This document shows, one piece after another, positions 2,840-60,361 of a DNA stretch of 64,000 nt. Position numbers and translations under genes: made by a program. Origin of the DNA: Macrostomum lignano (Eukaryota). Below the pieces are notes generated by a model. The model worked only from the letters and a program-made list of their open reading frames with translations, was not told where the DNA came from and did no database searches. The stretch lies in assembly GCA_002269645.1 (NCBI GenBank), contig NIVC01000829.1, positions 124,001 through 188,000 of the forward strand. The letters are read 5' to 3'. How positions within the stretch are numbered: the stretch's first letter is position 1; each line of letters starts with the position of its first letter.

Positions 2840-5800
2840 TTAGGTGACGTACACGCTGGCAACGTGGGAATCCTGTAAGGCAGATCTGCCCTAGTAGGTA
2901 GGCCGTATTTTAAATCTGTCCTTTAGTTTTTTAACTTACTGAGTTTTCGTAATCCTCGGTAACGTAGCGACTAAACCTGAATTTTGAAGCCGGTTGTCTC
3001 ATCGCAGTTTGAGCTGGAGTATTTCTGCGTCGTCTGCAGCATAGCGCGGTGATCGAAATTAGCAAAGCGATTATAATGATGACGAGGACACCAACTATTT
3101 TTGTAAATAATACCGTGGGCCTCTCCAAAATTTTCTTCCGCTCTGCTTCTGTAAATTGATGTTTATCGAGTCTGATCAGACAGTGAAGTGCAATTTAATG
3201 CTCTTAGTGATATGCACTTTGCACTCACCATGGTACGATTTCAGGATAAAACTTTCGGAGAGGCTTTCGTTTAACAAACGACAGCTAATAGCTGACACTG
3301 AGATAATTGATGGTTTAATAAACAGGGACAACAGAGACGTTAACGTTCCAATACACCGAGGAGCAACTGTGTTCGTTATTTCCTATAAAATATAACTTTA
3401 AAAAATGACGTCTAAACTGGTAATTATATCAACAGTTTTATTCAAAAAATAATGCCAACCTTTTTTATTAGCATTGCGGGAATTATGGTACCATTAGACG
3501 TCCTCAGCTCACATCGATGTGTTACACTAGGGCAGGAGTTCTCGGACATGGCACGGAATTGAATTATTCCAAATGACAGCAGTCTAGGTTGAACTAATTC
3601 GAGTTTCATATTCTCTGGGTTGGCTGGAATAAAACACATCTCAGATTAATTCATTTTTAAGATCAGATTATATGAGATTAAAAACTTTCTCTCACGTGAT
3701 GGTAATACTGTCTCCTGCTCGACCTTTCGTGGGAGTCCAATGGCCCATGTGACAGTGCAAGAGATTCTGCGAATGCAGAAATTTCCAATGGATTGAATTG
3801 CTGAAGAGTCGATTATAAATTCAGATTCGACTACGTTTTGGTACATAGTCTTTAGCTGCAAGGCATAAATATGACACAACATCGGCACATGTAATAAGCA
3901 AAGCACATCCGCAAACAATATAAAATTAACACAACAAATATGTTAAATATTACTTTAAAAGTAACAGGTTGCTCTGAGCACATAGAAAATATTGTGCAGC
4001 TGGTCTGAGCATCTGCAGTGGATGAATGAACGAGTACTCTGAGAGAGCTAAGACTTTCGGTTGAACCTGACCAGGTGTCAATGAGCGGCTTTACATTGCG
4101 ACCTGAAATAAAATGAAGACCGGAAACGAATCTGAGTAGCCATTCAAATTTGGATTGCTTAGTATGTACTGTACGAGGGCTTTTCCTCTACGATTATAAA
4201 TCCCACCAAGTGTTCTAGGGCTAATTTGTTTATACACTATATCCTAACGCTGCCACCAAGTTTTTGTAGGCCCTACTTCTAGCTATTCTACCCAGATTTT
4301 ACTACAAGTTAAGACTCCTTGCACAATGAAGTATTCGTGGTAGCAGTGTCAAGCGGCAAACACTGATCTAAATTTTTTAGCTTACTAAATTCCTACTCTC
4401 GTTTTTTCGAGTCCTGAACTAGGCTATCCTGGGATGGAGTTGCCCGACTGGCCGAAAGCTTTCTGTCCTCTTACGGTTTCTCTCTCTTTCCTTCTAGTGT
4501 CAATTCAGCTTCCCAGAGTACCAAGTCAGAGGGCGCTGCTTCAACAAGGTCAAAATTTCCCAACGTCGAAAAGTAAATTATTTCACAAGGTCGAAATTTG
4601 ACAACGTTAGAAAACTCAAATAGCAGCCACTTTCACAAGGTCGAAACTTCACAAGGTCGAAATTTCACATCGAAAACTCTAGCGAGAGATTTCATAAGGT
4701 CGAAGTTTCATAACATCGAAAACTCAAATAGCAGCCACTTTCACGAGGTCGAAACTTCATAAGCTCAAAATTTCACAACGTCAAAAACTTAATATAACAA
4801 GAACCATACAGTATAGTTTTTGATGTTGTGAAATTTCGACCTTGTGAAAGTGGCTGCTATTTGAGTTTTCGATGTCATGAAATTTAGACCTTGTGAAAGA
4901 AGGTGCTTTCGACGTTGCGAAATTTCGAGTTTTAAAACCCCCAACCCCTAAGTCAGAACGCTTTGCTTTCTTAAACCGAATTAAAGAAACGGGAAACGGC
5001 GGGCGAAACTCCGCGGCTAAAATCACTTTTTATTTATAGTATGCAGAGGGAGATTAGGGTACGTGGGATGTGAAGAAACAAAATTTATGTATCACTTTAA
5101 CAAAAATAATTTTTCCGACTATAACGAAATTATTTCACTAAAACAAATGCTTCATTTAAAAAAATACGTAGCTAGACATAACAGACGGAAATTTGAAATA
5201 AGTTCTTTCAAAGGTGAATAAGGAGAATATTAAAATAGGGCCTGCCTCAGTACTTTTGCTAAAGAATGGTCGGAAACTTGCTTGCTAGGCGCGTTATTAT
5301 TTTATAAAATACCAATATGGAATACTTATAAGCCTTTCAAGCCTACTGCAAGAAGTTATAAATGGCTTCGGATCTATGCAAAATATGAAACGTAGCCGTA
5401 CTCACCAACGCTAAACTCCATTATTTTCGAACACGACGTACTCCAAGACTTTGTTCGATGTCATGCTCATGTTAATTCGGTTTTACTAGTTTTGTAAAAC
5501 CAGAAATTACAAGTAAGGTAGACAAATCAAAGTCTTCAGTAAATTTGCTCAGCCGTAAATTCACCACTTTGTTATTCATAGCTTCTATCTTCCATATTTG
5601 AAGCATATTTTTGTATCCAAATGAGCCGTAAGCGGGTGGGCTTTTTCGAATCCCCTGTTGGGATCTAATAAGCTCTCTAAAAGTTCCAATACCTGAAAAT
5701 TGATACAGAATAAGCGTTAAAATTTACCTAAACCTGTTTAAACTTAACGTACTTCTTTTCATCGGGTCCATTGCGGCAAAGATTTTTAATAGGAAATTTA

Positions 5801-7215
5801 ATTTTAGAAACTATATTACCTGGAATATTGTTGACACCGAGGAAGCCAGCTGAAATCGAATTAAACATTCTATACATGAAGGCTAGAGTTTTCCCGCCGG
5901 ACTTTCTTGAACTGGCTTTCAATCGCAACAATACTGTTCCGGTAAGCCAGAACTCAGACAGGGTAGCACTGCTTTTCGTGTTACCGTAAATGTAAACGGC
6001 GTCACTAGAAGACAAAAAATTTAGCTCCTGAAAATAAATTTTCACGGACAGAAGGGTATTTAGTACCCAGCAATGATCCCATTGGTCAGAGTTCATTGAG
6101 ATGGCTCCCTTCGTGTTGCTTTCGCTGCTCACAGTGCCTTCTGTTTGAATCAAATCAATTTTCTGCGAGCAGGCATCTAAAAATATAAAGCGAATGCCAT
6201 AACTCATAGCTTATGAGGTCATAGAAAAAATATTTCTTACATCATTGCTTCATTGCTTCATTAATATATACTAATTGATTTGTTACTGAAGCCAAGTTCA
6301 AACCCACAGTTTTCTTTTTTCTCATTCGAATAATAGATAAAAAGATGGCAGTTCTACATTTTTTAATAATTATTAACCGATCTACCATCATTTATAACTT
6401 TTTTATAAATAATTAAAATAAAACTATTTCTCACTTTCTTCAGTAATGAAAAACTTAAAGTGGAATCCGATGCTGGTTATCCAGCTGTTAGTCGAGAATA
6501 CCAGCGTGACACTGTGACGAAACTGGCGCACTTGAATACTTCGATCACCCGAGAACTTCACCAAGATGCGGCTTCCTGCGTCTGGAAGCATACCTTCATA
6601 GATTTTCAGGCAGTCATGGGCTAACTCCGTTTAAAATAATACGAAACTTATCTTTATAACGTATCCGGGCTGAACATAAAAGCTCCAAGCCGTATTAAAA
6701 TTGTTTGGGTACATGGTTTTTCCGAAGGTTGGATGACTTGATCGAATTCCGCTTCAATGCTTGATTATCTCTGTTGCGGCTGATTGGTGAGTAGAATTTG
6801 GAAAAGCGGTTATAATTTTGTGTTATGATTAGTTCAAAATTCAAGCAACTCACCCGAAAGTAAAACCTGTTGTTTAACTCAAATATAAATTGAATGCCTT
6901 TCTTTTGCACTGAACCGTCAGTTGTGAATCGAATAAGAGTTGTTCCAGTCACCCAAAACTCGGACATTACGTCGGCTCTGTGAGTCAGTCTAAATCTTTC
7001 ATAATCAGTATCGTTGGTGTCGGTGCCGACGAATATTTGTATTTTGTCGCAGCATTTTTCTAGATCCAGTTTCGAAAAGCGAATAACTTTAGTTCCCGAG
7101 GTTCGGATTACCCAGCGTACATCCAAGTTGCCCGCTTAAAGACTGCTGGAGTTTGCACTGTCAGGACAGGCAATAGCTCCTGTTGAAGTATAGAAGTCTG
7201 CGTTCGGGCAGGAAT
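2840..7215 (-). pseudogene. CUB-array paralogue 1: CUBx4 + stalk module + TM, pseudogene
   Basis: CUB1 exon starts at 7215 (SCPNADFYTSTGAIACPDSANSSSL*...WVIR...CCDKIQIF...GSVQKKGIQF). CUB2 about 6440-6780, CUB3 about 5730-6180, CUB4 about 5400-5690. Stalk exons 3954-4102, 3696-3855, 3460-3623, 3229-3382; TM exon 2940-3148; terminal exon 2840-2872 (DSHVASVYVT*). In-frame stops: TAA 7136-7138, TGA 6754-6756, TAA 6631-6633; frameshift and stops in CUB4. Confidence 0.85.
4545..4935. repeat. Foldback/MITE-like element made of TTCACAAGGTCGAAA subrepeats in both orientations, in an intron of paralogue 1
   Basis: 36-bp perfect inverted pair 4611-4646 / 4834-4869, plus several direct copies of ttcacaaggtcgaaa. 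Confidence 0.65.
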
Positions 7216-7469
7216 CTGAAATAACATCGGACATAGAATTTTGAGTAAATACGAGCGTATGCATGCACAATAATTTTTATGTTCATCAACATAGTTGCTA
7301 CACATTTCAGTATTACTCAAATTACTTCGATGCCATATTTCACGATACAACATATTTCATTGTTACTGACATCGCAGTAGGTTTGTTTTTACGCTCGTAT
7401 TTCCGTTTTTCAGTTAGTAAACGAAAATTGATTTACATGTAAATACACTATAGTACACGTAGATATATT

Positions 7470-7745
7470 GGGTCGCCTTCACAAGCGCTAATTTTCATAA
7501 CCGCTAGCGACATTGACTTTCACATGCGCTAAATTTCACAAGCGCTAAACTTCAGTATAGCGAAAGCACCTACTTTTACAAGCGCTAAACTTCACAAGCG
7601 CTAAACTTCACAAACGCTAAACTTCACAAGCGCAAAACTTCACAAGCGCTAAACTTCACAAACGCTAACCTTTACAATCCAAGTTTAGTACAAGTTAAGC
7701 GCTTGTGAAAGTAGCCGACATTCGTATTTTAGCGGTTTTTAACGT
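7470..7745. repeat. Related foldback-like element with 16-bp CTTCACAAGCGCTAAA subrepeats
   Basis: About 6 tandem 16-mers at 7570-7675 and an inverted copy at 7698-7711; shares a gaaagcacct-cttt-acaag motif with the reverse complement of 4889-4909. Confidence 0.55.
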
Positions 7746-10332
7746 AAACAAAACTTCTCGAAAGTGAATTCGCTAATTCTAGACGTACAGTTAGTGGGAA
7801 AAGTATTACAAAACTTACAGCAATGTATTCGGCATTTCATGCTTTCTTACCTGCCACTGTAATCCAATATCTGATTATTAAAGTTAGTACTACGATATTC
7901 ATCTGTCAGGATTTTAGATTCTTATTAGCAATTTCAATTTAAGATGATAATCAATCGAATCTCGAATGGTAGAGCAAAGATAGTTTGGCGATATTAGTGG
8001 CTTTATATTTAGTGGCTTAATTATTTATTCATATCGCATATACATCCTCCGTAAACATTTATTAGCGTTTTGTTAGATAACAGTTCGAAATCTAACTTCT
8101 AAACTACGAGCTCTTAACTATAAATTACACGTGAACCTGTTATTTCTGACTCTCTGAAATACAAAATTGGTTCTGAAATCTATATCCTTTTCTAATAATT
8201 GTAGCATTAATTGATAATGTTTATTGTATTTATGGAAACTTTACAAACGAATGTATCAAAATGATTTGAATTTCAACTTAAGTACACGTTAGTTCGCGAT
8301 TGCGATTGTACCGCCACCCACAGGGTCGGTCAGAAATAAGGTATACATTATTGTGAAAGATTGCAATAAAAGGACCACACAGAATATAAAGGATCGGGTC
8401 TGGCTTATATTTTTAAATTGAAGTAGAGAGCCACCCAAAAAATTACCTAGTCTTTCAGTTCAGAGAAATCAAGAGTGCCGCTGGGAAAGTACGTTCAAAT
8501 AAGATCATAACGAGCATTTCAATAAAGTTGCATGTAGTTATTAACATTTTGCATACATGTAGCTCCTTGCTCGTCGGTGCGCGCAGCTCGTTGAAAGCCT
8601 TGGTCTGGGATGAAAAACTCTATCTGGATCTTCCGCAGCTCGCACTTGTCCTTGCTGGCGGTGAGGCCGGCGTACTCCAGTCGCTTCAGAAGAGCTCGCA
8701 GTCTCAAGTCGTGTTCGGCCTCAGTTGCTCCGAAGACGATGAAGGAATCCAATATGTGCTCCACTACGGGCAGATGGGGTCACCAGGTCGTCCAGCATCT
8801 TCAGGAAAGCCGCCGGAGCAGGCGCTAGACCAAACGGCACGCGGCAGTAACAGTATGAGCACTGGTGCGTAATGAAGGTCGTTATGCCACCTGATGACTC
8901 GTGTAGCTGCATCTGCTTGTAGCCCGCCTTGAGGTCGATCTTGGAGAACATGCGGCTGCCGGCCGCCTTGATCTTTGCGAATATCTCGTCCAGCTGCGGC
9001 ATCGAATGTCGGTCGCTGATCAGTGACTTATTTGGTTCGCGCACGTCGACCAGATTGGAAATCCATGAGCTCGAGTTGACCCGCTCGATGATGCCTGCTG
9101 CCTCCAGACAGTCGAGCTCCTCGCCTACCTGTTCCTGCTTGACGAGTGGCAGGCTGCGCAGCGGCTGCTAAACCGAAGGCACGGCCGTGTTAATTCTTGG
9201 TTGGCTGCAGAGAAAGAGACCAATTGATCCGTTCAGACAGCTGAGAACTCGCTGGCGACGTCCAATCCAGATGTTGCAATCGTGCGGCTGGAGTTGCACT
9301 TGGATAACTAGTTTCTGCATCAAATCGCGGGCCTACGATATTTTTGCCCGATCTAGTGACGTGAAAGTCGTGTTGCAGTTCTTGGCCGTGGTACTTAACG
9401 CCGATCTCCTTCCCGCCATAAGCTCGTAGCTGCACTGCCGATGTCTTTAGATCGATGTCGCTCAGACTTTTCACCGTAGCCTCGTTGACAGAGAAACTTT
9501 GGCGCCGCAGTTGACTATCAGGCTGAAAGTCTTCGAGCAGCCGCCCAGCTGCAGTTTGACTCTGATCTCGTCGCCGCCAAGGACCGCGTAGATCGTGACA
9601 GTCTCGTCTGCGCTGACTTGGATTGCCTTGCTGCGGCAGCATTAACTGAAGTGGTTCAATTTCCCGCAACTGTTGCATTTCTTGCCGTGCGTGGGACACT
9701 TTGCCTTGACCTCGCGGCTCCGTCCGCATCGGATGCGTTGCCGGGGCCCTGTTGCCTTGCTGCCTGCCGCCGCGTCCTCGATCGTGGTCTCGATGACAAC
9801 TACTTGCTCTAGTGTCAGTCTGGCGGCGTCCTCCGTCAGAAGACGCTCGCGAATCCGAGTTCTGCTGGTCTTATGGGCAAGCTGGTCGCGGATCATTTCG
9901 TCTGCCAGAGTTCCGTCGCTACACGTGGCTGATAGCTCTCGTAGCGCTGCGACCAACGTGACACTGTCTTCGCCCGGCAGCTGCTGTCGCTCCCTGAATC
10001 GATGACGCACCAACATCACATTTGGTCGGTCGCCAAATACCGTCGCCAGCTGATCGCGAGTTTGCTAGAAGGTATGACCATCGACAATCGCATTTCGGGC
10101 GATCCGCTGCCCCTCGAAGCCGAGAAGGTGCAGTAGATGGTTCCTGCACACCGTCGCCAGTCGCCTAGCCTCAACTGTCGGGGCTTTTTCACCCGCCGGT
10201 CGGGGTGTCCAGATTTGGGCTCTTGGCAATAGAAGTCGAATGCGTCCAGCCATCTGTTCCATGAGACCGCCGGTGATCCGCTTGCTGACAGAAATGGTGC
10301 AGGTGAGCTAAAATTGAGAGCCATCTTTGTCA

Positions 10333-10345: not shown

Positions 10346-10347
10346 GT

Positions 10348-11921: not shown

Positions 11922-14900
11922 TCAGGTGACATAAACACCGGTAAGACTGATGCCCTGAAAATTTAAACAGTTTTTAGCATGATTCTATTGATATTTTGTC
12001 ATTATCATGTTAAAATAAGCAGGGTAATGTACAGGCCCCATAATGTATATAGTCTCTTGCCGTCAAGAGTTTTTTAAACCATTCTCTTCTTGAAGAAGTC
12101 TTTCAAGTTGCAGTTGATTGTAAGGTAACCTATCTTTGCTCCCATTAGTAGAGCTATACAGACATTGCATAATCTCCCTTATGATTTGAATTATGTCACC
12201 TACACACAGGACTCTGGCAGGAATCTCTAATTCATCTTTCAGGGCGAGCTTGCGGGTTCCTGCCAAAGCTAGAACGTATCGCTGTCGACTCTAATTTAGC
12301 TCGTAAGCTCAGTCTACTCCAGGGACCGTACTGGCTGATCGTTGTCTTAGCTAGCTGGGTACTATAACAGTTCGGTATACATCGACTGCAGTATCAACAC
12401 CTTCATCAAACCCGCAGAAATAGCTTCAATCCAACGCCAACTTCTGTCTCTGCTAGTCTATCTCCCAATTTGGACACTATATCATAAATAATCCTGAAAA
12501 ACCGCAGATTACATACCGAGTTTTCATATTCCCCAGTTTGATAATGACTGAACCTCGATGCTGAAACCGTGCTTCTGTTCACAGTCCTATGAGACCTATA
12601 TTTCTTTCGCCTGAAAAGCAGCGCAAGCGAGAGAGCTGACAAAGCAATGATGACGATGACTGCTACTGTGGATGAAGCTACAAGAGCCCATCTCTTCCAG
12701 AGTCCTGGAAGCTTAGCTGATTTTGGTGTCAAAGCAGCAGTTTGAATTTCGCCACATAGGTGCGACACAGAACGCTCCAAAAAGTTTCCTTTAAAGAGGC
12801 GACACTTAATGATTGATCCTTTGATGACTGCTTGATGAGCGAACGCTGAGAACTGTGACGTCACTGTGCTGCGAAACTCTGGTAGAACTGGGTCTGACAC
12901 GGTCTGTGAAAAAAATGTGCGATTGAGATTAAATGATGAAGTGAAATTGTTTGTGAAGTCATTTGTTTGGATGCGAACCTTTTTGATCAGTATAGCGGGA
13001 ATATTGCTTCCATTGGCCGTTTTCAGCCCACACCGGTGTATCACTCTTGGGCAGGAGTTCTCCGAAATCACACGGAACTGAAGGATGCCGAAGGACAACA
13101 ACTTGGGTTGAACTAACGTGACTGTTGCATTTTCTGGATCAGCTGAAGAGACGCATTCGATTTTAGGATTTATGACTAAATAAATCACGCAACTAATTGG
13201 CTAATTTTTCTCTCACCTGGGAGTAGAGCAACAATCTGTTCAACCTTCCTAGGCAAACCAAACGCCCAGGTAGCTATGCAAGTCACTCGATGGATGCAGA
13301 CATTGTGGATGCTTTGAATAGCTGAGGAGCCGATAACAAACTCTGATTCGACAACGTTTGGTTCCACCTGAGTTAGCTGAAAGTATGAGTCGTATCTAGA
13401 ATCTTTAGCTTTTTTTGGCGGGACTTTTACGTTTAATTTTGCTAACAAAAAGAGCTGCCATACCTGTACGAAGACATCTTCCTGGGAAAACTTCGGCTGA
13501 AATTTACAGTAGACCTGAATATCGGCTGTTGCGGATCTCACGAGCAATCTTAATGAGGATAAACTTAAAGCAGTTCCTGACCAAACTGGCACAACGGGCA
13601 ATAGTGTTCTTCCTGCAGAATTTAGGTGGTACGGTTTGTGTAATTTTACGCTTAGTATAGTGATTAGCCTTAGAAGCCAAGCATTTTTCCTATATCTCTT
13701 GTTGAACAAGATACTAAAGAACCATCGTATGCTTCAATACATGCATAGACTGTTAAAATTAGGAAATGATTACAGCATTTTACTTATGATACCTGTGGTT
13801 TATTGGTACAAAATTTTTGCCTCGCAACCTTAAAGCCCCACAATAACTCTTATCATTCCGCCTTTTTTAGATATTAGTACTAGATAAATTGAATTCGAAA
13901 ACGCACCGACACTAAACTCAAACACGAAGCTCGATAGTAGTGCAATACGGTTGATAACAAAGACAATATTGACAGCTTCCGGGAAGACAAACTCAATAGT
14001 ATGATTCGTTGCTGAATGTTGTTCAGTGCTGAGCTAAAAAACTGGAGACGATTCAGAGTGTACATGCAGATCATGCTCATCGAATTGTCTTGAAAAATTG
14101 CTAATTCGAACATTAACAACTTGATTTTGCGTCGCTTCAATATTCCAAATTTGAATCATTTGATCAAATCCAAATGTTCCAAATGCAGCCGGACTCTTTC
14201 TGAAGCCTCTACGCGATTTTATATATTCCCTGGATTCACCTCTATTACCTAAAATAAAGGATTGGTAGAAAAATACTAGAAAATTAGTTAAAATAACAGA
14301 AAAGTAAACAATTTTAATAAAAAATATTTCGTATTTAACCTAGCAATGATGTAGTCTTTAAAAGGCCTTTATTCAACACCGAAAAGTTCATTGTTTCTAC
14401 TTTTGCCAAAATGGAAGGAAAATTAATGAAATCTAATAAATTACACACACACCTATGTCAGCATGTTAGCACACAATAATGTTTAATATTTTTACAGCCA
14501 GTGCTTCATGTTCTAACTTGCAATCAACTTTTAAAAATATTTTTTTCGAGTCAGTTTCTGTGATAAAAATGCTAAATAAATAAATAGACATCTCTATAGA
14601 TATGTTTATGTTGTTATATCGTGACATTATAATAACGTGGAGCAGACCTAATCAAAACAAATTGTTCAACTTCGCTCCTGTACTTACCATTCAGAAACAA
14701 TATTCTTCTTATGCTTTGCCTTCTGAATGAAAACTCAAGCGAAGCTTTCTTGTATCCAGTTGCGTTTGCTTTGAATCGGATAAGCGTCGCACTATGGAGC
14801 TGAAACTCAGACTCTGTAGCGTTACTTGCACTTGTAAGTCGATACAGCATCCTGTCTTCCAATGGAACATCTGTGTTCCCATAAATGTAAATGAAACCGC

Positions 14901-16444
14901 AGTATGGCTCCAAGACCAGACCATGGAAGTGAATGATTGCAATTTCGCTCTGACTGGAGTTAATTAACCAGCACCGGTCTATTTTTAAATTTTCGGTTTG
15001 ATTTACTACTGATAATGATTTATTATTATTTTCAGTACTGCCACTGATCACGGTACCTTCTTGATCTGAAAACAGCAGTTTTTCAGAACACGAGTCTGAA
15101 AATTTCAGGAGCTGGGCGCTGTGTCAAGTAGAATACAATTGTACGAGTATATTTTCAGACACCTACTTGGTTGAAAAAAAATAAATATTTTTATGGTTCT
15201 ATTGTTGTCTCACCTATAGAGCGGCTGCTGTCTAAAACTATTTTTGCATTATATTTGGGCGTTCTATATATTTTATTTTCTAAAGATGTGCAAATGAAAA
15301 TCCATATTCACGTATAAATGTGCGGTTATAAATTTTTCGTAAGCACAAAGCTTTCTAAATACCATGCAAAAAATTCAGACTAATACGAGCGTATTTCTAC
15401 CAAGGCTGTTTAGTAGAAATATTCTTATAGAAGCCTCCATTTATGTGGAAGAATTAATTGATTTTTTGCTAATACACCTACTGTATAAACAAAGAATCAA
15501 ATGCTCACTTTCTTCGATGACAGTAAACTCAAAAATAAATCCTGTGCTAGTTGACCAGCTGTTAGTCGTAAAGACGAGAGTTACGCTGTGCCGAAGCTTT
15601 AGTGTTTTGATTGTTCGATTTCCCGAAAATTCGTTCAAAACATAGCTTGATACGTTTGGTACAGTGCCAGAATACAATCTAAGATAGTCGTAGCTGGATT
15701 GGGTTTCAAATTTAAGGAACTTTAACGTCATATAATATCCACTTGGAATGTTGATACTCCAACTTAGTTTAAAGTCATTCGGATATAACTGTGCCCCAAA
15801 GCTTGTATGGCTTTTCCGATATCCACTCCGTTGCTTAATGAGCTCTGTAGCAGCTGGCAAATGGAGTAATAATATAAAACGGGGATTAGGGGTGATATTA
15901 AATTGATGTTTTCAACTTAGCTAGCATGTACATGTATATATCATTAGTACAGTGAGAAGAGCCAACTAGGTATGAAATACAATCTATTTATTAAGGGTTA
16001 ATGTGTCCAACCTCTTAGCTTTGAACCCTCTAGAAGCGTCGTATCGAACTGAAGTCGAAAGCCAGTCCTCACAATCGATCTGTCAGATGTAAAGCGAATA
16101 ATAGTTGTCCCTGTCACCCAGAACTCCGAGCTAGCGTCAGCTCTGTGTGAAAGCCTGAACCGTTCATAGTCTGTTATATTCATGTCGGTGCCATCATATA
16201 TACGAATTTTGTCGCAGCATTCTTCTAGGTCTAATTTTAAAAAGCGAATAACCTTAATTCCAGGTGTTCGTATCACCCAGCGAGCGTCCAGGTTGCTCGA
16301 GTACAGACTACTGGAGTTCGCGCTGTCTGGGCAGGCTACAACCCCAGTTGATGAAAATAATTCTCTGCTCGGACAGGTACCTGAAGGGAATTCAAAGGTA
16401 TTTTGTCTGTCACAAAAAGCTAAAAGATTAAGCAAGGTGAACAT
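11922..16444 (-). CDS. CUB-array paralogue 2: CUBx4 + stalk module + TM + Tyr tail; one in-frame TAG in CUB4 (possible null allele or truncated form)
   Basis: Exons: 16027-16380 CUB1, 15509-15853 CUB2, 14688-15095 CUB3, 13907-14248 CUB4 (TAG 14034-14036), 13464-13612, 13217-13376, 12979-13142, 12756-12903 stalk, 12517-12716 TM (WALVASSTVAVIVIIALSALSLALLF-RRKK...YQTGEYENS), 11922-11954 terminal (GISLTGVYVT*). Splice phases are compatible. Start uncertain (in-frame ATG at 16444). Confidence 0.8.
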
Positions 16445-22156: not shown

Positions 22157-22210
<54 letters not shown>

Positions 22211-22243
22211 ATAACTAACTAAATAAATAAATAAATAACTAAA

Positions 22244-22341
<98 letters not shown>

Positions 22342-22342
22342 G

Positions 22343-22379
<37 letters not shown>

Positions 22380-23282: not shown

Positions 23283-23322
<40 letters not shown>

Positions 23323-26154: not shown

Positions 26155-26735
26155 CTTAAAAGGTAGTTTAAAAAAAATAAATATCTAGTGCATAAAATCA
26201 TAAATGATAAATGTCAAGTTGAGCTCCGGAATCAAGCCTCTGGATCAAGTCGGCTACAATCGATAATTTGCCAGACTAATCGACTTGAAGCGCGCCTTCT
26301 TGAAAATGCGGTTACAACGAGAAATAGTTTTTGACACAAAAATATTCTCTATGCAAAAACTTTAGGAATACAGAATGCAGGGGCTGGGACACTTAGCACC
26401 AACAATGGTGAAAGTATAGATAATTAATTTTTTGGCCAAATCTGGCATTCCTATTTCAAAGATTAGTTTCTGTTGTGGCCTTAGAATGCACATCGGTCAA
26501 GCCAAACTTAAAAAACCTATTTTACGAGCTATTAGCAACGAAGCGAGGCAACGTTTCTTAGAGACAGGGAAGGCTAGAAGGAGAGGACCTTAGAAGCAAC
26601 TATTCAACTAACACGTAAGTTCCTGTGACTAACACAGCGAGTGGAGTTGAAGACACGGGGGGCTTAATCATAGACAAAATATGCTTGGACTCGAACATGA
26701 CTTCTCACACTATAACAGTTTCTAAGAATGACAAT

Positions 26736-26935
26736 GGTAGTAGCTTAGTGGTTAGAGCGTCAGACTTAAAGGTTGGGGGTTCGATTCCCGATCCCACTGG
26801 AACAATTTGTGCCCTTGAGCAAGACACTTAACTCTGTATTGCTTCAGTTCACCCAGCTGTAAAATCAGCACCAGCATCAGCTGATGTAATTAAGAGTGTA
26901 TGTGGCGACCTCCAGCCCATGGACTAAACAGCCGT
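26736..26935 (+). mobile_element. tRNA-derived SINE with a CORE/Meta-like central domain
   Basis: A box TAGCTTAGTGG (26741-26751), B box GGTTCGATTCC (26778-26788), then tgtgcccttgagcaagacacttaactc...cttcagttcacccagctgtaaaat, similar to the conserved central domain of CORE-type SINEs. Confidence 0.75.
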
Positions 26936-29900
26936 ACGCAGCCTTCAGATGCGCTGCACAATAGCTGCGGCTGAGCTGCGCTGCACATATGCAACCGGTG
27001 TAATGACAAAGGCAAGCAACCATTTCTTAAGCGATGTTTGCCTAATATTCTAAGAAATTCAGCTAAAATTTGGTTGCATTCTATAGTCTTGATAGATATA
27101 ATATTTCTGTGGTTCTAGTCGAATTTTCTGGCAAGTTATCCATTACAGTTGGTTTGGTTTTGTCGTTGAATTTTGAGCTCCATTTCAGAGATTTAAAAAA
27201 CTGACATTAACTTTGTAACTCGTAAAAACAGAAAATCGCAACTTGCTCACCAACTGGTTGCAGTGCTGAGCGTGACAAAATTAGCAGCGCGACGCCAAGT
27301 AGCAAGCCGTTGATTGATCTGCAGCCCATCTGATGCAGAAATTGATTTAATATGAGCATACTTTCAACAAACTGCAAGTTGCAATGAATAGTTCAAAGTT
27401 TAATAAATCAGCAAGTTTCTAAGTTTGGACTGCCGCTAATGCGCTTCAGTGACGCGTTTTAAATAAACAAGGACGGGTGCAAGTGAAAATCACCAGACAG
27501 CAGCCAACTGCAGCCTTTAAGACGCTAACATTTTTCAGCCTTCCCCGAATGTGCTGGAGGTTGCACTACGAATATGTGCGGATAGAAGCGGCAAGTAAAC
27601 GTTTTTCATTCCAGCATGATTTTAATTTACTGCTCTCGTTGATAAACTTTCAATCTGGACCTATAGCGTTTCAAAAGTTTATTCATATAATGAAGCTTTT
27701 ATACATGTACTATAAGAGTAAATTTTTTTTGGACTCTGACATTTTGGTCAGAGCAAGAAGAAAGTTTCTCTTAGAGATTAAATCTGTTAAAACACTTTCA
27801 TTGCTTGCTTTTCTAGCAAAGTTTTAATTATACAAGCCTTTCATCACATGACCAAACTGTAAAAATAGCAGTAACTACGATAACAACGAGCTTGGGCGAA
27901 GTCTTTAACATTGATACAGATCTTTTGGCAAAAGAAAGCTGATGGCTACGGAAACACTACTAGGTAAATGTAGTCGTGGTTTAAGGTTAAATATTTAGCA
28001 GATTTTTCTTTGCGATTTCTATTTACGTGTAGCACTTTCATGTAGGTAGCTTTGGTTAGCAGTAAAAAACTTCGAACCTAATTGTGTAAATCCATGTAAG
28101 TTCTCATGGTGACATCAATACAGCAGCATGTTCTCATGGCTTACGCTCTTAAAGGAAATTAATAAGAGTGTGCACAGCCATTGTGTATTTTTTATTCAAC
28201 AACCTTTTAATATTTTCAATAGAATCTGTATTTGGCGATGCCTCTCAGAAAATGGTCATCTCCAGAATTAGACTTGATCTTCAATAGACTTTTAATCTTT
28301 TGAGTTGCATTTACAAAAACATTGCAGATATTATCAATAGAAGCTATACTAGGAACAAATTTGCTGTTGTTACTAACATTTTTAAATTAACACAGCCAAG
28401 TGATAATATGAAGTGAAATAATTGCTTGAGTTTTCACGGGTCATTTGCAATTTTCGGACCAGTTTGTAAACTTTATTAAACCTTAGCAATTTCAAGTTGA
28501 ACTTTCTTTACATTTATATATTTAGACCTAAAATTCCAAAAATATTAAGCTGAAGTTACGCGTAAGAAATAATACATCTGCATGTATTTAAAATAAGAAA
28601 CGGCCTTTCAATCTATGCCAGCGTCCATCAAGTGTTTCCCGAACGGAAACCATAGACAAGATAACTACTCTCGTAGAGCGAACTTCACCGGTAGACGAAT
28701 CACAAGGATTAGCAGGAATGTAAATATTGAAGGCTTCTGCAAGCGAATATAATTGGTTATTACTCGTAAGTTTTCCGATTCAATAGATGTATATAAACAC
28801 TGAATCGGAGAACTTCAATTCTAACCATATGTAACTTTAAATGAACCTGCCATTTTCCTTACTTAGTCGGGGCACGGGCAACTAAAGCAGAAGGAACCTA
28901 CACTCAAGATTTCAAGATTTAAGTTTTTTAGCACAACATCCACCGCAGTCTCGCACCTTCTGGAACTCATAGGAAATCGGGAGTGTCTCATACTGTGTAT
29001 TTTGTGCGAAAATTTATTTCCAGAAATCGGCCTCACGATTTGCCAGTATAGCGTTTGTCTTCTTTATCCATGAGTACGTAGAACGTACACAAAGCCAGTG
29101 CGCATAAATGAAAGCATTTTAGCATTATTGAATAGATGGATTGAGCTCTCAGTAAAACCAAATCAACCGACACATCGATATACTATGCAATACACAACAT
29201 AGCTGCAAGGCTTCCTGGAGTATACTGGGTGCAGATGGGAGGTGTTGCCGCCCATTCCACAGACCCATGGCAATCACGGGCAGCTGGTGCTACGATGTCG
29301 CGCAGGAAGATCCGGTGGTGCCGTCGTTCGCAGTTCTGTCCCTCTCTAGAAAGTGGGTGATCGGTCGCCCGGTAGCCCATAGGCATGGATGAGGTGGCAG
29401 AAATTCCCGTGCTTAAAAATATCGGAGAGATCCGGGTTAAAGGAGACATTTAAACATTAAATGCTTCCTTGAACTGACTAGCCATGACTTGAGATTAGCC
29501 GTGGCCACCGCCTTGATGCCCATACGGTTGAGTCCTGCGGAGGGCGGGGGAGAGGAACAGAGGACGACAGAGCTGAAATACCAGTCATCCTTACCTCTCC
29601 CTGAGCTGCGTTGCCACCCAGTGGTTAATCTAGACTGGTAGCGACAGCAGTATGATGGAGGCCACATGCAGGGGGTCAAAGAATATAAAGTGTTGCACAT
29701 CATCTCGAAATAATGATAATGAATTTCGCAAAAATCAGTATTTTATGGTATGTTGTGTTGATAATTTTGTTTAAATTCGTTCATCCTTACAAGAAATGAA
29801 GTTTTTTCACAGTTTTTTCAGAAGTTTGTGAAATTGCACAAAATAAAGAACAAGTACTGTAAACAACTAATCAGATCGAAGGCTAAAATGATTGCGCGGT

Positions 29901-30565: not shown

Positions 30566-30628
30566 GGCAAAGAAGAGACGCGCAGCATTTTTACGCACTA
30601 GCAATATAGTGCATAAACTAGTTGATAT

Positions 30629-30960: not shown

Positions 30961-31015
30961 CCATACGTGAATTAATAAACTTTGTCACTAGACTCAACCC
31001 AAAGGCTGACACCGA

Positions 31016-32657: not shown

Positions 32658-35600
32658 TCACGTGACGTAAACTCCGGTTGAGTCATCAGGCTGAAAGTCG
32701 GATGCAAGCATGATTAATAATTTGACATTGCTGAAAATATGATGAAGTCTGGTGCCTCAAATCACATTAAAGCTGCTTACAATGCCTGCTGATTCGCCAT
32801 AGTATTGGTTACTGACTGTCGTTTGCATCTTCATTGACTCATTCACTACTGACGCATCCGGCGATTCTTTCCAAGGTGGCCACCGACCAGATCTCATCAG
32901 CACAAAGCAGGCCACCACTGCTACCAGTGCAATGATGGCGAGAACAGCCGTAGTTGATGAAGCTGCTAGCAGTGGCCGCTCCCAGACTTCGGCCAGTCTC
33001 GTCTCTTCTGTTGATGGAGTCGATATTTAAAGCAGGGCTGCTTCTTCGTGGAATAACATCTGAAATCAGCTGCGAAACTCACCAAAACCCAGTTCGGGCA
33101 GCACGAGCAGCGCAGAGCTGCCGTTGAGCAGGCGGCACCTCACGGTAGAACCCGCTACGTCTGATGGCTGAGCGAACGCTAAGAACTGCGACATTACCGA
33201 GCTGAAGCACTGCGTCCCGGTGGGCTTCGAGACATCCTGAATTTAAGCAAAACATACTATCTTGCACAAATAGCGAGCTACATAATGCTGCCAACAGCCA
33301 AAAACAACCTTCTTTATTAGCGTCGCGGGAATCGAATAATTAGTAGCCGTCCTCAGCTCACAGCGATGCCTCACACTGGGACAGGCGTGTTCGGAAACCG
33401 CACGGAACTGAATCGCTCCATTGAGTAGCCACAGCTTTGGATTAATCAACTCAAGCTGTAAGTCATTTGGTTCAACTGAAATCAATTAAAAAAGCGCAGA
33501 AACGGGCTTTGATTACATAGTTTGTTTTAAATGAATCAAGGGCCTTGCTTTTTATGCGCTGTTATGAAGGAAACTATTAGCCAGAGAGTTCAAAAGCGAT
33601 ACCTGGAGGCAATTCGCTGAATTCAATCGAATCGAGCATTCCTGGCACAGAGAATATGCAAGACACATTGCGGCTGCACACTTGACGCTGCCACTGCCCG
33701 AAGAAGTGGAATACTTTGCCCAAAGACGTCGGGACAATTCGATCCTGTGGTAGCAGGTGAAGCGACGACTGAGCTTAATAATTGATGGTGTGTGAATAAC
33801 GTGAGCAATATTGACTAGAACAAAACTATTATGAAAAAAAGTATCAACTTTAATAGGCATTCATCTGATAAAACTGTGCAAAATGGCAAATACTTTGGAT
33901 TTATCTTACAACACGCATTGGGATTTCGATGGTTCCAGTCCCACACTCCTGGTGCAGCCGACATTTCGCTGACAGGCCTCGGATGTTTGCAGCTGTTGTA
34001 AACAAAATGCGCACTGCAGCACCCGCGGTGATTCCAGCAGAATCTGGGAATCTCCATTGAATTTCTCGAACAGCTGGGATAAGAGAATGATTATTGCAAG
34101 GAGCTGAGAATCTTTTCTTTTATTTTCAATTTTTAGCATTGAATAAATCAGCTGTACATAAGACATATTTTTTCACCTGATTAGAACTCTCAAAATTCCC
34201 GCCAATTTCACATGTTTATTTGAAAACAGAGTCAGAAACGCCTAATATTCGAATAAAGTATTTCTTATTTTAGAATCAACTTTACGATGAAGAAAGTAAT
34301 AGCATGTTAGATTGCTATTTTTCGTTCAATTTCGATTCAAGTGACGTTATGCGAATATATATACTTCTTGTTCTAATGAAGTTCTTTATACTAAATTCCT
34401 ATTTTTTGTATTCATCTATGCATTGATTTCATAATCTTAACTCAACTCACGCAGTTGCATAACCGGCAGAGAATAGTTGACTGTTCCGGCTTGCTTGTAA
34501 CAAAGTATCGTGGAATTGACTGTGTCGATGAGCTCAGCCACCACAGCAAAGTCTGTCTGAACTCTGCTCACACACTGAGAAGTACGTGGCTGTGATGCTT
34601 GCTGAAGTTTTTATGCCGCAATTGTATCAGAATGAAAATACGCTAGCTGGGTATTGTAAATTGAAGGAAAATACAATTGCGTATATCTGCATATCAGTAC
34701 GGGCCTACAGTACATCGTTTAGTTGTACACGCCTATCATAGCAATTACTCTAAGTATATTATATTATGCTAAATATTTTAACTACGCATTATTACATTAT
34801 TCTTACCCGCTTCACTTGCGCAGCAGTGACTGCGCTTCCATTGAAAAGCCTCAGCTCGCAGCGATGCCTCACTCGCCGACACTCGGCTTGAGACACAGCT
34901 CGAAACCGAATCAAACCATCTGAGAGGCTCCACAGCTCAGGCTTTATCAGGCTGATTTCAAGTGAAACTGGCTCAACTGAAAGTTATTTATATGTATGAA
35001 GGAAACTAGAGCAGGATAATCATTAATCTGATACAGTTATTGTATGGCTTTGCTAATTGTCGAATTCAGACACTTTCACCTATTCAAAAATTTTTTGCAG
35101 ATCTACAGTCTCAGAAAATGATTAAATACGTTTTACCATCAGGTGCTGGTGTCGATTCAACCAGTTCATTCCTACCGCTGCCACGGAGTCTGCACGTGAT
35201 GTTTCGAATGCAGACAGCAGTATCTGAGACGATTCCAGAAAATAAGAACAATTTTTTAGCTGATCTTCGCTGTGAGTAGATCGTCTGAGGCAATGGCAAA
35301 CAATTCAGATAATTTAAGACCTCCGTAAATTTGGTTTTGATTTCAAATTAAAACATTAAAAGGTCGAAAAAGATTACATTCGCTATGCAAGATTATAAGA
35401 AAAACTTAAACCAGTAAATATAAGCAACTTTTTTCGAAAATTTAATGCACGAAAATGCACGGCTTACGGAATTCATTGCCATCTCCGAAGTTCGGCTTCC
35501 ACATTCAAGATTTAAGTAACACCTGGCTGATACATTTTGATCCAGGGAAATCAGTGAAACACTGAATTTCGAGCCGCCTATAGCCATTCTGGTCCATTTT

Positions 35601-36979
35601 GAAAAGATCAGCTTAAATTCAGGATAATCTGTAAATATAGTATCATGCTGAGTAAATATAGCGCTGTAAAAAAATTTGTGTATTTCAATTTTTTATGTAA
35701 TTGAAAGGAAATTTCTGGAAGTACTTATTATTGCTTAAAACGGTAATTCATTATACGAATAATCGATAATCCTATGGCGCATAATCCGGAGTAGAAATCA
35801 GCTGTCTCACATCAACAATGTTGACACTCGTGTGTTCTTGAAGTTACGAGTACGAGTAAATACGGGAAAAATGTTCTTCTCCTCTGCCCGTATCTGGCCA
35901 AGAAAATACATTTTATACAAAAATACATAAACTTAGTCTAGATTTTCTGCACAGGACAATTAGTGACTTAACTTCTGAACTTTCTAACTAGATCCAAAAT
36001 ATAAAAACTGAAAAAACTGAAAGATACTGTAGACTTATTGTAACACTCACAGACACCGAACTCAAATTCGAACCCTTCGTGGACAGTGCCGCTGTCAGTT
36101 GTAAAAATAAGTGTGACGCTATGCGAAAATGTGTATGATGGATGAAAACTTGTTTGCCCGCCCGATATCTCTTGCAGAGCCGTGCGCTGATATCCCGGAA
36201 CAAGTCCTGCATATATTCTAAGATAGTCGCAGCCAGATTCCGTGTCAAACTTTGTGAATCGAATGAAAACACTGAGATTTCTGGGAACGTATATACTCCA
36301 AGCCTTTTTGTAGTTATTGCTGTAGGAGCCCACATCTGCACGATGGCTCCGTCTGACACCGCTTCTCTGCCGAATGACCTCAGTAGCAGCTGAAATTCCA
36401 TTTGTCATCCGAGATCAAAATCAATCAGCAAAAGTGAACCAGAGTGTTAGCTGTTATAAACGTAAGGCATAAAATTCACCTGGAATCGATACCGACCGGC
36501 GTTCGTAAGAAAGCCGAAATCCGGATCTCGTGACAGAGCCGTCACTTCGAAACCTCACAACAAAGGGCGCATTCAGCCAGAACTCAGACTCAGTCACGTT
36601 TGCATGCACAAGTCGAAACCTCTCTGAGCTGTTTGAGGCTGAGGTCGCGTTTTCATAAATGAGCACTTTGTCGCAGCATGGCTCCACATCCAGCTTGCTG
36701 AATCGGATTCGGCTGACACCACGTGGTCGAATAGACCAGGAAACGTCCAAATTGTTTGAATACTGGCCTCCGTAGGAGGGGCACGCGATCGTTCCAGATG
36801 ACGAGGAAAGCGTCCCACCGGAGCAGCATTCTGTTTAGTAACCGAGCGTCGTTATAACAAGAGCGACTTATTTTGACTCTGATTAAAAAAGAATAAAACC
36901 TACCTGAAAATGGAAACCAACATAGCAAGCCAAAGACAGAGAGTTGAATGTAATGGAAAAATCTGGTGTCTGTTTTCAT
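32658..36979 (-). CDS. CUB-array paralogue 4: signal peptide + CUBx2 + two stalk modules + TM + Tyr tail, complete 13-exon model, 760 aa
   Basis: Exons 36904-36979 (MKTDTRFFHYIQLSVFGLLCWFPFS), 36480-36830, 36051-36389 (CUB1-2), 35468-35628, 35137-35284, 34807-34976, 34451-34601 (stalk 1), 33910-34073, 33603-33744, 33309-33475, 33083-33236 (stalk 2), 32781-33007 (TM: WERPLLAASSTTAVLAIIALVAVVACFVLM), 32658-32690 (PDDSTGVYVT*). Total 2283 nt; all phases compatible; no stops found. Confidence 0.85.
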
Positions 36980-38078
36980 CGCAGGCTGCTGGTAGAGCTG
37001 AAAGGCTCAGCAGAGTAACCTGAAAACTGCGGTTTCGATGTTCCTTTTCATATTTAAGCGCCAAAATCTTCTTTCTACTGAAGTAAAGCAAGTTCCAGTA
37101 AACAGGACATTAACTTTAGCTTGATTCTAATTGGAGTAAATAAAACCAGATCTGAATTCCATATGCTAATTTTGACTCAAGACTCCCAATTTTCGCTTAT
37201 TTGGTTGCTATAGTTTATGAATTTAAATTTAAATTTAATTTGAATTGCAAATCTTGAAATCACAGAATACTATCAAGGTGAAATTTTGCTGTTTCACAAC
37301 ACTGCATCTCAGAAACAAAACCCATTGAAACAGTTTCTGGTGTTTCTATGATGAAGATATGATATTTTTGCTATCAAAAAATTTTGAGTTGTAATCGATG
37401 TGGACTGTTGCGCTTATCTAATCAACTGGTAATTAACTGGTAATTAACTGGTGTTAATCTAAATTTTGAACGGACGAACGGTTCAAATTTCGTAAAAATT
37501 GTTCGAGCCGTTTTTTTCCAAAACCAATTACATATTTATCTAAGAGCTACCTACAGACTAACAAATCATTCTTTGGAATATAACTTAAGGCTCACTCATA
37601 CAAGCGCAAGGTTTTTTAAGCTCTGAGTAGGAAAGAGTTTACTCACAATTCCGAACCTTACGAATTTTTAAGTTTTATGATTGTACAGATGTCTTTACGG
37701 GAATTCTCTCTGTAATAAAAACCGTTTGGATGCAAAAATTATGCATGTATGACATTTAACAGCATCGTCTGTTTATCTTTCTTCGTTTAACTTTCCATTC
37801 CATTCTTGTTGCCTGAAGCCTGCAGCCTGTACACTCAGCCACCAACTTATGGTGTATAATTTTTTCCAAGAAGTTTGTAGCCTCTCGGCGACTTTATGCT
37901 AGACTACCACGTCATTCGCAGTGTAAACTTTTAATTGCGAAAAGTTACGAATAACAACTGATGCATGTATAGTGTCATTTGTTTATTTAGGCATTATTTA
38001 GGCATTTTTATTTAGGCGTTTTTTTAAAGAAGGGTTGAAATCTCGGTACAAGAATGTCTACTGAACAAACTAACTAAC

Positions 38079-38504
38079 CAAGATTCGGCAGGTGCAGCTG
38101 TAGCACAGAAGTACTGCTATTTAGCAGTGAGCATTCAATGACCGATCGTCCAATGAGCGATAGCTGAGCAACACCGAGAACTGTGAAATCACTGTGCCAA
38201 CGCACTTTGAGTTGGTGCTCGTGTTTTCCATCACCTGCGGGTGAGTTTCAAATGTAATTTTGCAGTAAGCTATATTTTGCATCGTCTAAAATGCAATCAA
38301 GGATCACTAAAAGTTACTGCCGCACAACTGAATCTTCTAGAGGTCCTTGAATGTGTTTCACCAACTCAACCGTTTAATCGGGGACGCAGGAGTGCTCACA
38401 TTATCAATGGAATATAATTTTGTATTTGGCTGGATAATATTGGCTTGAAAACCCAGAATGGCTGGTTCGAACACCGCTACGCTGTCGCAATATTTCCGTT
38501 GATT
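38079..38504 (-). pseudogene. CUB-array paralogue 5 relic
   Basis: 38404-38504: start of a CUB2-type exon (STEILRQRSGVRTSHSGFSSQYYPAKYK) ending in a stop. 38079-38234: stalk exon D homologue (KCVGTVISQFS / VAQLSLIGRSVIECSLLN) with a 1-nt frameshift. Confidence 0.7.

Positions 38505-53688: not shown

Positions 53689-60361
<6,673 letters not shown>

What the first reader, a model, noticed from the sequence alone, without database searches (positions are those of the whole stretch)
2840..38504. Tandem birth-and-death cluster of CUB-domain membrane receptors with shuffled ectodomain architecture
Seen in sequence: five paralogues on one strand over about 36 kb. Copies 1-3 are CUBx4 + one stalk module + TM; copy 4 is CUBx2 + two stalk modules + TM; copy 5 is a relic. 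The CUB exons I mapped fully (copies 2-4) are phase 1-1, so they can be gained or lost in frame. The paralogues are strongly diverged in the ectodomain but keep exon lengths and the C-terminus, and intact, stop-containing and decayed copies sit side by side. Established: tandem, fast-turnover clusters of single-pass receptors with Tyr tails are typical of invertebrate immune and allorecognition loci, and CUB domains mediate protein and carbohydrate recognition. Inference: this may be an undescribed lineage-specific recognition-receptor family. I do not recognise this architecture in neuropilin, cubilin, CDCP1, DCBLD or tolloid families.
Basis: partly seen in the sequence, partly recalled or inferred. 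Interest (0 to 1): 0.85.

Follow-up and report, generated by a model that had tools for sequence, protein, structure and literature searches.

The report
Flatworm CUB–Ig membrane receptor gene cluster
This is a real tandem cluster in the flatworm Macrostomum lignano: four old paralogues plus one relic of a flatworm-only family of single-pass membrane proteins, built from CUB domain pairs and hidden Ig-like domain pairs; it is an uncharacterised receptor family, and nothing here shows immune or self-recognition behaviour.

Summary
On the minus strand between 2840 and 38502 lie four full-length paralogues and one relic, with phase 1-1 CUB exons, one transmembrane segment and a conserved C-terminus, (S/T)xVY(V/L)(T/N).

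AlphaFold and Foldseek place both as Ig-like beta-sandwiches with no Pfam match.
- Copies 1-3 are CUBx4-(B-A)-TM. Copy 4 is CUBx2-(B-A)x2-TM.

The window is Macrostomum lignano Mlig_3_7, contig NIVC01000829.1.
- Copy 4 is the RNA-seq-derived gene BOX15_Mlig014562g1 (exact match).
- Copy 3 is an intact 817-aa ORF.
- Copy 2 has one nonsense change (TAG; GAG in a sister contig).
- Copy 1 has three stops and a frameshift.

An exhaustive profile search of 1.84 billion proteins found relatives only in M. lignano.

The "fast-turnover recognition locus" reading is not supported. Paralogues are old (synonymous sites saturated). The cluster exists in three colinear copies, matching the known subgenomes. 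Between those copies pN/pS is a uniform 0.31-0.35 across CUB, Ig-like and tail regions.

Function is unknown. The best guess is a cell-surface binding receptor. Novelty is moderate.

The parts
32658..36979 (-). Copy 4: intact, annotated gene BOX15_Mlig014562g1 (PAA76314.1, 759 aa). Architecture: signal peptide, CUB1, CUB2, B1, A1, B2, A2, TM, tail. 13 exons: 36979-36904; 36830-36480; 36389-36051; 35628-35468; 35284-35137; 34976-34807; 34601-34451; 34073-33910; 33744-33603; 33475-33309; 33236-33083; 33004-32781; 32690-32658 (PDDSTGVYVT*).
   Evidence: The spliced translation is identical to P0012. The locus L002 is 100% identical to the window. Pfam finds two CUB domains.
20807..27359 (-). Copy 3: intact 817-aa ORF, not annotated at this locus. 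Architecture: SP, CUB1-4, B, A, TM, tail. Exons: 27359-27251; 26154-25792; 25716-25366; 25283-24888; 24803-24411; 23793-23645; 23562-23403; 22093-21927; 21853-21700; 21106-20922; 20833-20807 (PASEVYLN*).
   Evidence: Splice sites are; the translation has no stop. Exons are 97-100% identical to the annotated sister genes P0017 and P0013 on contigs NIVC01000293.1 and NIVC01000254.1.
11922..16994 (-). Copy 2: CUBx4-B-A-TM with one in-frame stop. Exons: 16994-16922 (putative signal-peptide exon); 16380-16027; 15853-15509; 15095-14688; 14248-13907; 13612-13464; 13367-13217; 13142-12979; 12903-12774; 12704-12517; 11954-11922 (GISLTGVYVT*).
   Evidence: The signal-peptide exon is inferred only. No protein of this type is annotated in either M. 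lignano gene set.
14034..14036 (-). Nonsense codon TAG in CUB4 of copy 2. The sister contig (L003) has GAG, a single-base difference at window position 14036.
2840..7902 (-). Copy 1: pseudogene, CUBx4-B-A-TM. Stops at 7138-7136, 6756-6754 and 6633-6631, and a frameshift in CUB4 (exon 5692-5406, 287 nt). The 3' half (B, A, TM, tail; 4102-2840) is still open with good splice sites and ends in ..SVYVT*. Exons: 7902-7851 (putative); 7215-6850; 6779-6435; 6176-5820; 5692-5406; 4102-3954; 3855-3696; 3623-3460; 3382-3229; 3148-2940; 2890-2840.
38077..38502 (-). Copy 5: relic. A CUB2 N-terminal fragment lies at 38502-38416 (STEILRQRSGVRTSHSGFSSQYYPAKYKI). A possible A-module fragment lies at 38178-38077.
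   Evidence: tblastn gives E 2e-5 to 7e-5 for the CUB2 piece and only E 0.3 for the A piece.
22143..23382 (.). Repeat block inside the copy-3 intron between the B and A exons: (CTAA)75, a 273-bp unit x3, and (ACTA)30. About 820 bp of it (window 22438-23261) has no counterpart in the sister contig.

Best explanation
This is a tandem array of an orphan, Macrostomum-restricted family of type I membrane glycoproteins.

Architecture. Each protein has a signal peptide, one or two CUB1-CUB2 pairs, one or two pairs of highly diverged Ig-like domains (B then A), a transmembrane helix, and a 35-60 residue cytoplasmic tail. The tail contains Tyr residues and ends in a separately encoded, conserved (S/T)xVY(V/L)(T/N) C-terminus.

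Shown: the architecture, the exon phases, transcript-derived annotation of copy 4, and the restriction to M. lignano.

Inferred from what CUB and Ig domains do elsewhere: the membrane-distal CUB pairs bind an extracellular protein or glycan ligand; the Ig-like pairs act as spacer or a second binding surface; the conserved C-terminal Tyr motif couples the protein to sorting or to an adaptor.

Evolution. Every domain unit is bounded by phase-1 introns. Whole domain pairs could therefore be duplicated in frame: (CUB1-CUB2)x2 in copies 1-3 and (B-A)x2 in copy 4. The tandem duplicates are old. The whole cluster was then triplicated with the M. lignano subgenomes. Individual copies are now being lost independently under moderate purifying selection.
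For: - Exon and paralogue maps.
- Exact match of copy 4 to PAA76314.1. The GenBank annotation is built from RNA-seq and transcriptome assemblies (PMC5730564).
- CUB by Pfam. CUB by fold: pLDDT 76, Foldseek E 1e-9 to 1e-7 to PCPE-1, neuropilin, MASP, cubilin and Neto2.
- B-A unit: pLDDT 83, pTM 0.78, all-beta two-domain model. Top Foldseek hits are Fab light chains, TCR and butyrophilin, E about 1e-5, probability 1.0.
- Hydrophobic 23-25 residue segment followed by R/K-rich residues in all four copies; conserved last exon.
- CUB3 aligns with CUB1 and CUB4 with CUB2.
- Only M. lignano proteins were found in 1.84e9 representatives and in two word-indexed searches.
- Three colinear copies at 91-99% nucleotide identity match the S/L1/L2 subgenomes (PMC10733133).
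- Omega is 0.30-0.45 between sister copies and uniform across domains.
- Different copies are broken in different sister contigs.
Against: - No ligand, expression site or phenotype is known. I found none of the gene identifiers in the text-held supplements of five M. lignano transcriptome papers.
- The Ig-like assignment is at fold level only, with TM 0.39-0.46 and about 10% identity.
- Signal-peptide exons of copies 1 and 2 are inferred from sequence alone.
- Copy 3 at this locus and every copy-2-type gene lack an annotated transcript.
- The substitution counts behind omega are small (11-30 per class).
Confidence: 0.6

Rival explanations
1. One reading: a fast-evolving recognition-receptor locus (innate immunity or allorecognition) under birth-and-death evolution and diversifying selection.
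For: - A tandem multigene cluster with pseudogenes and shuffled ectodomains.
- Ectodomains are strongly diverged: B is 20-26% and CUB 27-65% amino-acid identical between paralogues. The tail end is conserved.
- The family is lineage-restricted.
- The cryptic Ig-like domains recall other invertebrate recognition families (the analogy is from my own knowledge).
Against: - Paralogues are old (dS saturated).
- The family is small.
- pN/pS is a uniform 0.31-0.35 in all regions between sister copies.
- Pseudogenisation differs between sister copies, as expected after genome duplication.
- No canonical ITAM or ITIM is seen in the tails (read from the sequences).
Confidence: 0.12
2. Auxiliary or clustering subunits of ligand-gated ion channels, working like SOL-1 (4 CUB + TM), Neto/SOL-2 (2 CUB + LDLa + TM) or LEV-10 (5 CUB + LDLa + TM).
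For: - The overall plan of N-terminal CUB repeats, a single TM helix and a short tail matches these proteins (PMC9083331).
- Neto2 is among the fold hits of the CUB pair.
Against: - No sequence relationship beyond the generic CUB fold.
- There is no LDLa domain, and there are extra Ig-like pairs.
- Those families are conserved neuronal genes, not tandem arrays with pseudogenes (own knowledge).
- The copies have diverged strongly from each other.
Confidence: 0.12
3. Reproduction-related surface proteins (gamete, mating or seminal-fluid interaction) in this hermaphrodite, a gene class reported to evolve fast in Macrostomum.
For: - The family is lineage-restricted and its paralogues are divergent.
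- Rapid evolution of reproduction-related genes in the genus is reported (title and abstract of PMC7336406).
Against: - I found none of the gene identifiers in the held supplements of the germline/neoblast and positional data sets searched. Stored files can be truncated, so this is weak evidence.
- Omega of about 0.3 is not elevated.
Confidence: 0.1
4. A decaying, functionless remnant cluster in which even the open copies are transcribed relics.
For: Three of five units in the window are broken. Sister copies of copy 3 and copy 4 carry stops or indels.
Against: - ORFs of 759 and 817 aa remain open across 11-13 exons.
- pN/pS of 0.3 is well below 1 in every region.
- The last exon is 100% identical at nucleotide level between sister copies of copies 3 and 4.
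- The copy-4 model is transcript-derived.
Confidence: 0.05

Closest known systems
SOL-1 / dSol-1 (four CUB domains + TM)
   Same: A type I membrane protein with four N-terminal CUB domains, a single TM helix and a short tail, as in copies 1-3 (PMC9083331).
   Different: There is no detectable sequence relationship beyond the CUB fold. The flatworm proteins add two Ig-like domains between CUB4 and the membrane. They occur as a tandem array with pseudogenes and have a different conserved C-terminus.
Neto1/2, SOL-2 and LEV-10 (CUB + LDLa + TM)
   Same: Two membrane-distal CUB domains plus a membrane-proximal module and a TM helix, as in copy 4. Neto2 appears among the fold hits.
   Different: No LDLa domain is present. 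Four Ig-like modules stand in its place. There is no orthology.
Neuropilins (CUBx2 - FV/VIIIx2 - MAM - TM - short tail with conserved C-terminal motif)
   Same: A CUB pair at the tip, spacer domains, a single TM helix and a short tail whose extreme C-terminus is conserved. Neuropilin a1a2 is a strong fold hit for the CUB pair.
   Different: The spacer domains are Ig-like, not discoidin or MAM. The C-terminus is VYVT rather than the neuropilin SEA (own knowledge).
Invertebrate recognition families with sequence-cryptic Ig-like domains in gene clusters (for example the Hydractinia Alr family; own knowledge, not tested here)
   Same: A clustered family with pseudogenes, type I membrane proteins, and Ig-like domains visible only by structure prediction.
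   Different: The Macrostomum proteins carry CUB pairs at the tip. The family is small and old, and I found no sign of hypervariability or diversifying selection.

Membership tests
CUB domain (Pfam PF00431) | A significant match to the CUB profile | tested here: met
   CUB1 and CUB2 of copies 2 and 4 score 25-39 bits against a cutoff of 21.4. P0012 has two stretches, E 2.8e-18. CUB3 and CUB4 fall below the cutoff on their own.
CUB domain (Pfam PF00431) | Jelly-roll beta-sandwich fold like solved CUB domains, tested for CUB3-CUB4 | tested here: met
   The AF2 model has pLDDT 76 and pTM 0.76. Foldseek matches PCPE-1, neuropilin-1/2 a1a2, MASP-1/2, cubilin, Neto2 and C1r/C1s at E 1e-9 to 1e-6. 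Botulinum HA70 jelly-rolls score equally well, so the fold match alone is not specific.
Immunoglobulin-like fold (modules B and A) | A roughly 100-residue, 7-9-strand beta-sandwich matching solved Ig domains | tested here: met
   The AF2 model has pLDDT 83, with module A above 90. Foldseek top hits are Fab light chains, TCR and butyrophilin, E about 1e-5, probability 1.0, TM 0.39-0.46.
Immunoglobulin superfamily (sequence level) | A match to an Ig, I-set, V-set or fn3 profile, or the canonical Cys...Trp...Cys pattern | tested here: not met
   No Pfam hit even at E 10. Conserved Cys residues spaced 58 apart in A are compatible with a B-F disulfide, but there is no conserved core Trp. Disulfide geometry could not be inspected.
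SOL-1 family | Sequence orthology to SOL-1/dSol-1 | tested here: not met
   Profile and single-sequence searches recover only M. lignano proteins plus generic multi-CUB proteins.
SOL-1 family | Modulation of AMPA-type glutamate receptor gating | not testable with these tools
   This needs electrophysiology.
Neto / SOL-2 / LEV-10 | An LDLa domain between the CUB domains and the membrane | tested here: not met
   No LDLa hit in any model. The membrane-proximal region folds as Ig-like domains.
Polymorphic recognition or allorecognition locus | Elevated nonsynonymous variation concentrated in the ligand-binding domains | tested here: inconclusive
   Between sister copies pN/pS is 0.35 (CUB), 0.31 (Ig-like) and 0.34 (TM and tail). 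This is uniform and below 1, but it is not population data and the counts are small.
Polymorphic recognition or allorecognition locus | Recent, ongoing gene duplication (young paralogues) | tested here: not met
   All paralogue pairs in the window have pS 0.55-0.94, that is dS of about 1 or saturated.

The most novel reading that the evidence does not exclude
The family is a flatworm-specific self/non-self or mate-recognition system. Variable CUB-pair tips are presented on cryptic Ig-like stalks and signal through the conserved VYV(T) tyrosine tail. It would be an independent invention of a CUB-plus-Ig recognition receptor outside the known invertebrate systems.
Probability: 0.1. Interest if true: 0.75.

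Novelty: new variant of a known kind. Interest (0 to 1): 0.35.

Why it matters
M. lignano is a transgenic, RNAi-amenable flatworm model. A taxon-restricted surface-receptor family could mark a lineage-specific cell-cell or cell-environment interaction there, and can be tested directly by ISH, RNAi or tagging.

The family has a domain plan I did not find in other CUB-domain membrane protein families: CUB pairs on sequence-cryptic Ig-like pairs, with a conserved tyrosine C-terminus.

The locus also illustrates two general processes:
- In-frame duplication of whole domain pairs through phase-1 introns.
- Independent loss of different paralogues in the three subgenomes of a young polyploid.

As it stands, it is an uncharacterised gene family, not a demonstrated recognition system.

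Tried and rejected
1. A full-length copy-2 query against the 5.8-billion-protein index returned only generic multi-CUB proteins. The word prefilter was swamped by CUB words. Querying the non-CUB half found the M. lignano relatives.
2. tblastx and blastn between the regions upstream and downstream of the copies found no conserved 5' exon. At first they found no 3' exon either. A more permissive run exposed the 10-codon last exon.
3. I first modelled copy 3 as lacking the second half of module B and skipping the first half. Mapping the sister protein P0017 showed the exon is present at 23562-23403.
4. M. lignano proteins and PAA76314.1 revealed two further B modules.
5. Pfam at E 10 on modules A and B gave nothing. 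phmmer of P0017 against PDB sequences gave nothing.
6. Rfam on the whole window gave no family.
7. Searches for the gene identifiers in paper texts and in the held supplements of five M. lignano transcriptome papers gave no hits. No expression class could be assigned.
8. dN/dS between paralogues within the window is uninformative because synonymous sites are saturated.
I replaced them with single-exon window references or substrings of session proteins.

Full report
**Checking the observation**

The window is eukaryotic, about 40% GC and rich in repeats. An all-against-all comparison of stop-to-stop ORFs showed two large groups of related ORFs. All are on the minus strand and recur at about 3-7, 12-16, 21-26 and 33-37 kb, with one fragment at 38.4-38.7 kb.

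Pfam finds CUB domains in the first two exon types. tblastn with the exon peptides of copy 2 maps the same exon series in every copy, with E 1e-10 to 1e-50 in a 64-kb search space. The repeat is real and far beyond chance.

**Gene models**

I mapped splice sites copy by copy.
- All CUB exons start after two bases that complete a split codon and end one base into a codon.
- The transmembrane exon ends at a strong phase-0 donor (GTAAGT, GTATGT or GTAAGC) in all four copies.
- A tiny last exon follows 49-560 nt downstream and encodes ..TGVYVT*..SVYVT* or ..EVYLN*.
- Candidate signal-peptide exons lie upstream.

**Identity of the window**

The non-CUB half of copy 4 hit only Macrostomum lignano proteins. 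An exhaustive HMMER search with a profile of module A plus TM and tail covered 1.84 billion representative proteins. It returned nine proteins, all from M. lignano.

One of them, PAA76314.1 (BOX15_Mlig014562g1, 759 aa), maps to the window with 13 exons and no mismatch. It equals my spliced copy 4 once two extra modules are included. Its locus on contig NIVC01000829.1 of assembly GCA_002269645.1 (Mlig_3_7) is 100% identical to window 22658-46979. Record coordinate therefore equals window coordinate plus 124000.

The GenBank annotation of this assembly derives from RNA-seq and transcriptome assemblies (PMC5730564). Copy 4 therefore has transcript support.

**Corrected architecture**

It is always preceded by a second two-exon module, B, with the same phase pattern. 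B is much more divergent.
- Copies 1-3: SP-CUB1-CUB2-CUB3-CUB4-B-A-TM-tail.
- Copy 4: SP-CUB1-CUB2-B-A-B-A-TM-tail.

CUB3 aligns with CUB1 and CUB4 with CUB2. The long forms therefore carry a duplicated CUB pair, and copy 4 carries a duplicated B-A pair. Every unit is bounded by phase-1 introns, so such duplications stay in frame.

**What the modules are**

Neither A nor B matches any Pfam family, even at E 10.

An AlphaFold2 model of a B-A unit, built on an alignment of 13 paralogous sequences, has pLDDT 83 and pTM 0.78. It is all-beta with two domains. Foldseek against the PDB returns Fab light chains, T-cell receptors and butyrophilins, at E about 1e-5, probability 1.0 and about 10% identity. 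Both modules are therefore Ig-like beta-sandwiches at fold level. Sequence-level membership of the Ig superfamily is not shown.

A model of CUB3-CUB4 (pLDDT 76) matches the tandem CUB domains of PCPE-1, neuropilins, MASPs, cubilin and Neto2.

**State of each copy**

- Copy 4 is intact and annotated.
- Copy 3 is an intact 817-aa ORF, but no gene is called there in the record.
- Copy 2 is open except for one TAG at 14036-14034. The sister contig has GAG there, and that is the only difference in the exon.
- Copy 1 has three in-frame stops and a frameshift in its CUB exons. Its 3' half remains open.
- Copy 5 is a CUB2 fragment, with a doubtful A fragment nearby.

**Sister copies of the cluster**

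Two other contigs of the same assembly carry colinear copies of the cluster at 91-99% nucleotide identity: NIVC01000293.1 (L003) and NIVC01000254.1 (L004). This fits the three subgenomes (S, L1, L2), about 2-2.5% diverged, described for this neopolyploid (PMC10733133).

Different genes are broken in different copies:
- Copy 3 has a stop in L004.
- Copy 4 has a stop and an indel in L003 and a deletion in L004.
- Copy 2 has its stop in the window only.

Nei-Gojobori estimates between sister copies:

| Gene | dS | dN/dS |
|---|---|---|
| Copies 2 and 3 | 0.014-0.022 | 0.30-0.45 |
| Copy 4 | 0.089 | 0.33 |

. Pooled by region, pN/pS is 0.35 for CUB, 0.31 for Ig-like and 0.34 for TM plus tail.

In contrast, paralogues within the window are 20-65% identical at protein level, with synonymous sites saturated. 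The tandem duplications are ancient. The visible "death" events are largely recent and specific to one sister copy.

**Family size**

The annotated relatives fall into three types:
- the copy-4 type;
- the copy-3 type;
- a third, unlinked type (P0019, 592 aa, SP-CUBx2-B-A-TM, ending ..SEVYVTLPN), which sits alone at its locus.

With copies 1 and 2 that makes five types, each present in up to three sister copies. This is a small family.

**Interpretation**

The structural description is well supported. Function is not.

By analogy with other CUB and Ig surface proteins, I take these to be cell-surface binding receptors. The CUB pairs would contact a ligand, and the conserved tyrosine C-terminus would engage sorting or adaptor proteins. 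This step is inference.

The tails carry YEN (copies 1, 2) and a C-terminal YLN (copy 3). These fit the pYxN consensus known for Grb2-type SH2 domains (own knowledge). The third type has YVTL, a YxxPhi-type motif. None of this is tested.

The closest architectural analogues are SOL-1, Neto/SOL-2 and LEV-10 (PMC9083331) and the neuropilins. The family fails the sequence-orthology and LDLa tests for membership in the SOL-1 and Neto/LEV-10 groups.

**Literature**

No paper in the searched library links M. lignano with these CUB proteins or mentions their identifiers. I found no entry in the held supplements of five transcriptome studies.

**Verdict**

This is a real, correctly located gene cluster. 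Its domain plan needed correction: cryptic Ig-like pairs, and twice as many membrane-proximal modules as reported. It represents an undescribed, lineage-restricted variant of the CUB-domain membrane receptor theme. Interest is moderate. The exciting functional reading remains speculative.

Noticed in passing
window 55165-59876 (+): A compact Ty3/gypsy LTR retrotransposon. The two 221-nt LTR segments (55165-55385 and 59656-59876) are 99% identical. ORFs at 55408-59500 carry zf-CCHC, aspartyl protease, RT, RNase H and integrase domains, so the insertion is probably young.
   Followed up: partly
window ~46440-46680 (+), gene extends from 45855 beyond 46979: An exon of a ubiquitin-conjugating enzyme (UQ_con), ..[24 protein letters not shown]... 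By my recollection it resembles UBE2M/UBC12. It is an annotated neighbour of copy 4 in the GenBank record and lies next to a 25/49-bp satellite at 46731-47669.
   Followed up: partly
window 22143-23382: The intron of copy 3 holds (CTAA)75, a 273-bp unit x3 and (ACTA)30. About 820 bp of this block has no counterpart in the sister contig L003. It is an example of the indel-dominated divergence between subgenomes.
   Followed up: partly
window 18718-19643; 52585-53575; 61136-61787; 62230-63375; 48446-49108; 63810-64000: Several long satellite arrays with 11-25 bp units and up to 51 copies. They fill much of the intergenic space.
   Followed up: no
window 8724-9167 (-), 50785-51504 (+), 40102-40554 (-): Fragments of reverse-transcriptase ORFs, and a weak match (below the Pfam cutoff) to a DDE_Tnp_1-like transposase zinc finger. 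These are transposon debris between and beside the receptor genes.
   Followed up: no
L003 (NIVC01000293.1:19708-45313) and L004 (NIVC01000254.1:47303-71166): Sister copies of the cluster. Copy 2 is an uninterrupted ORF in L003 yet has no annotated protein in either M. lignano gene set. Copy 4 is more diverged between sister copies (dS 0.089) than copies 2 and 3 (0.014-0.022), which is unexplained.
   Followed up: partly
L005 (NIVC01000900.1:334590-359410): A third, unlinked family type (P0019, 592 aa) occurs as a solitary gene. Its tail extends three residues past the conserved VYVT, giving YVTL.
   Followed up: partly
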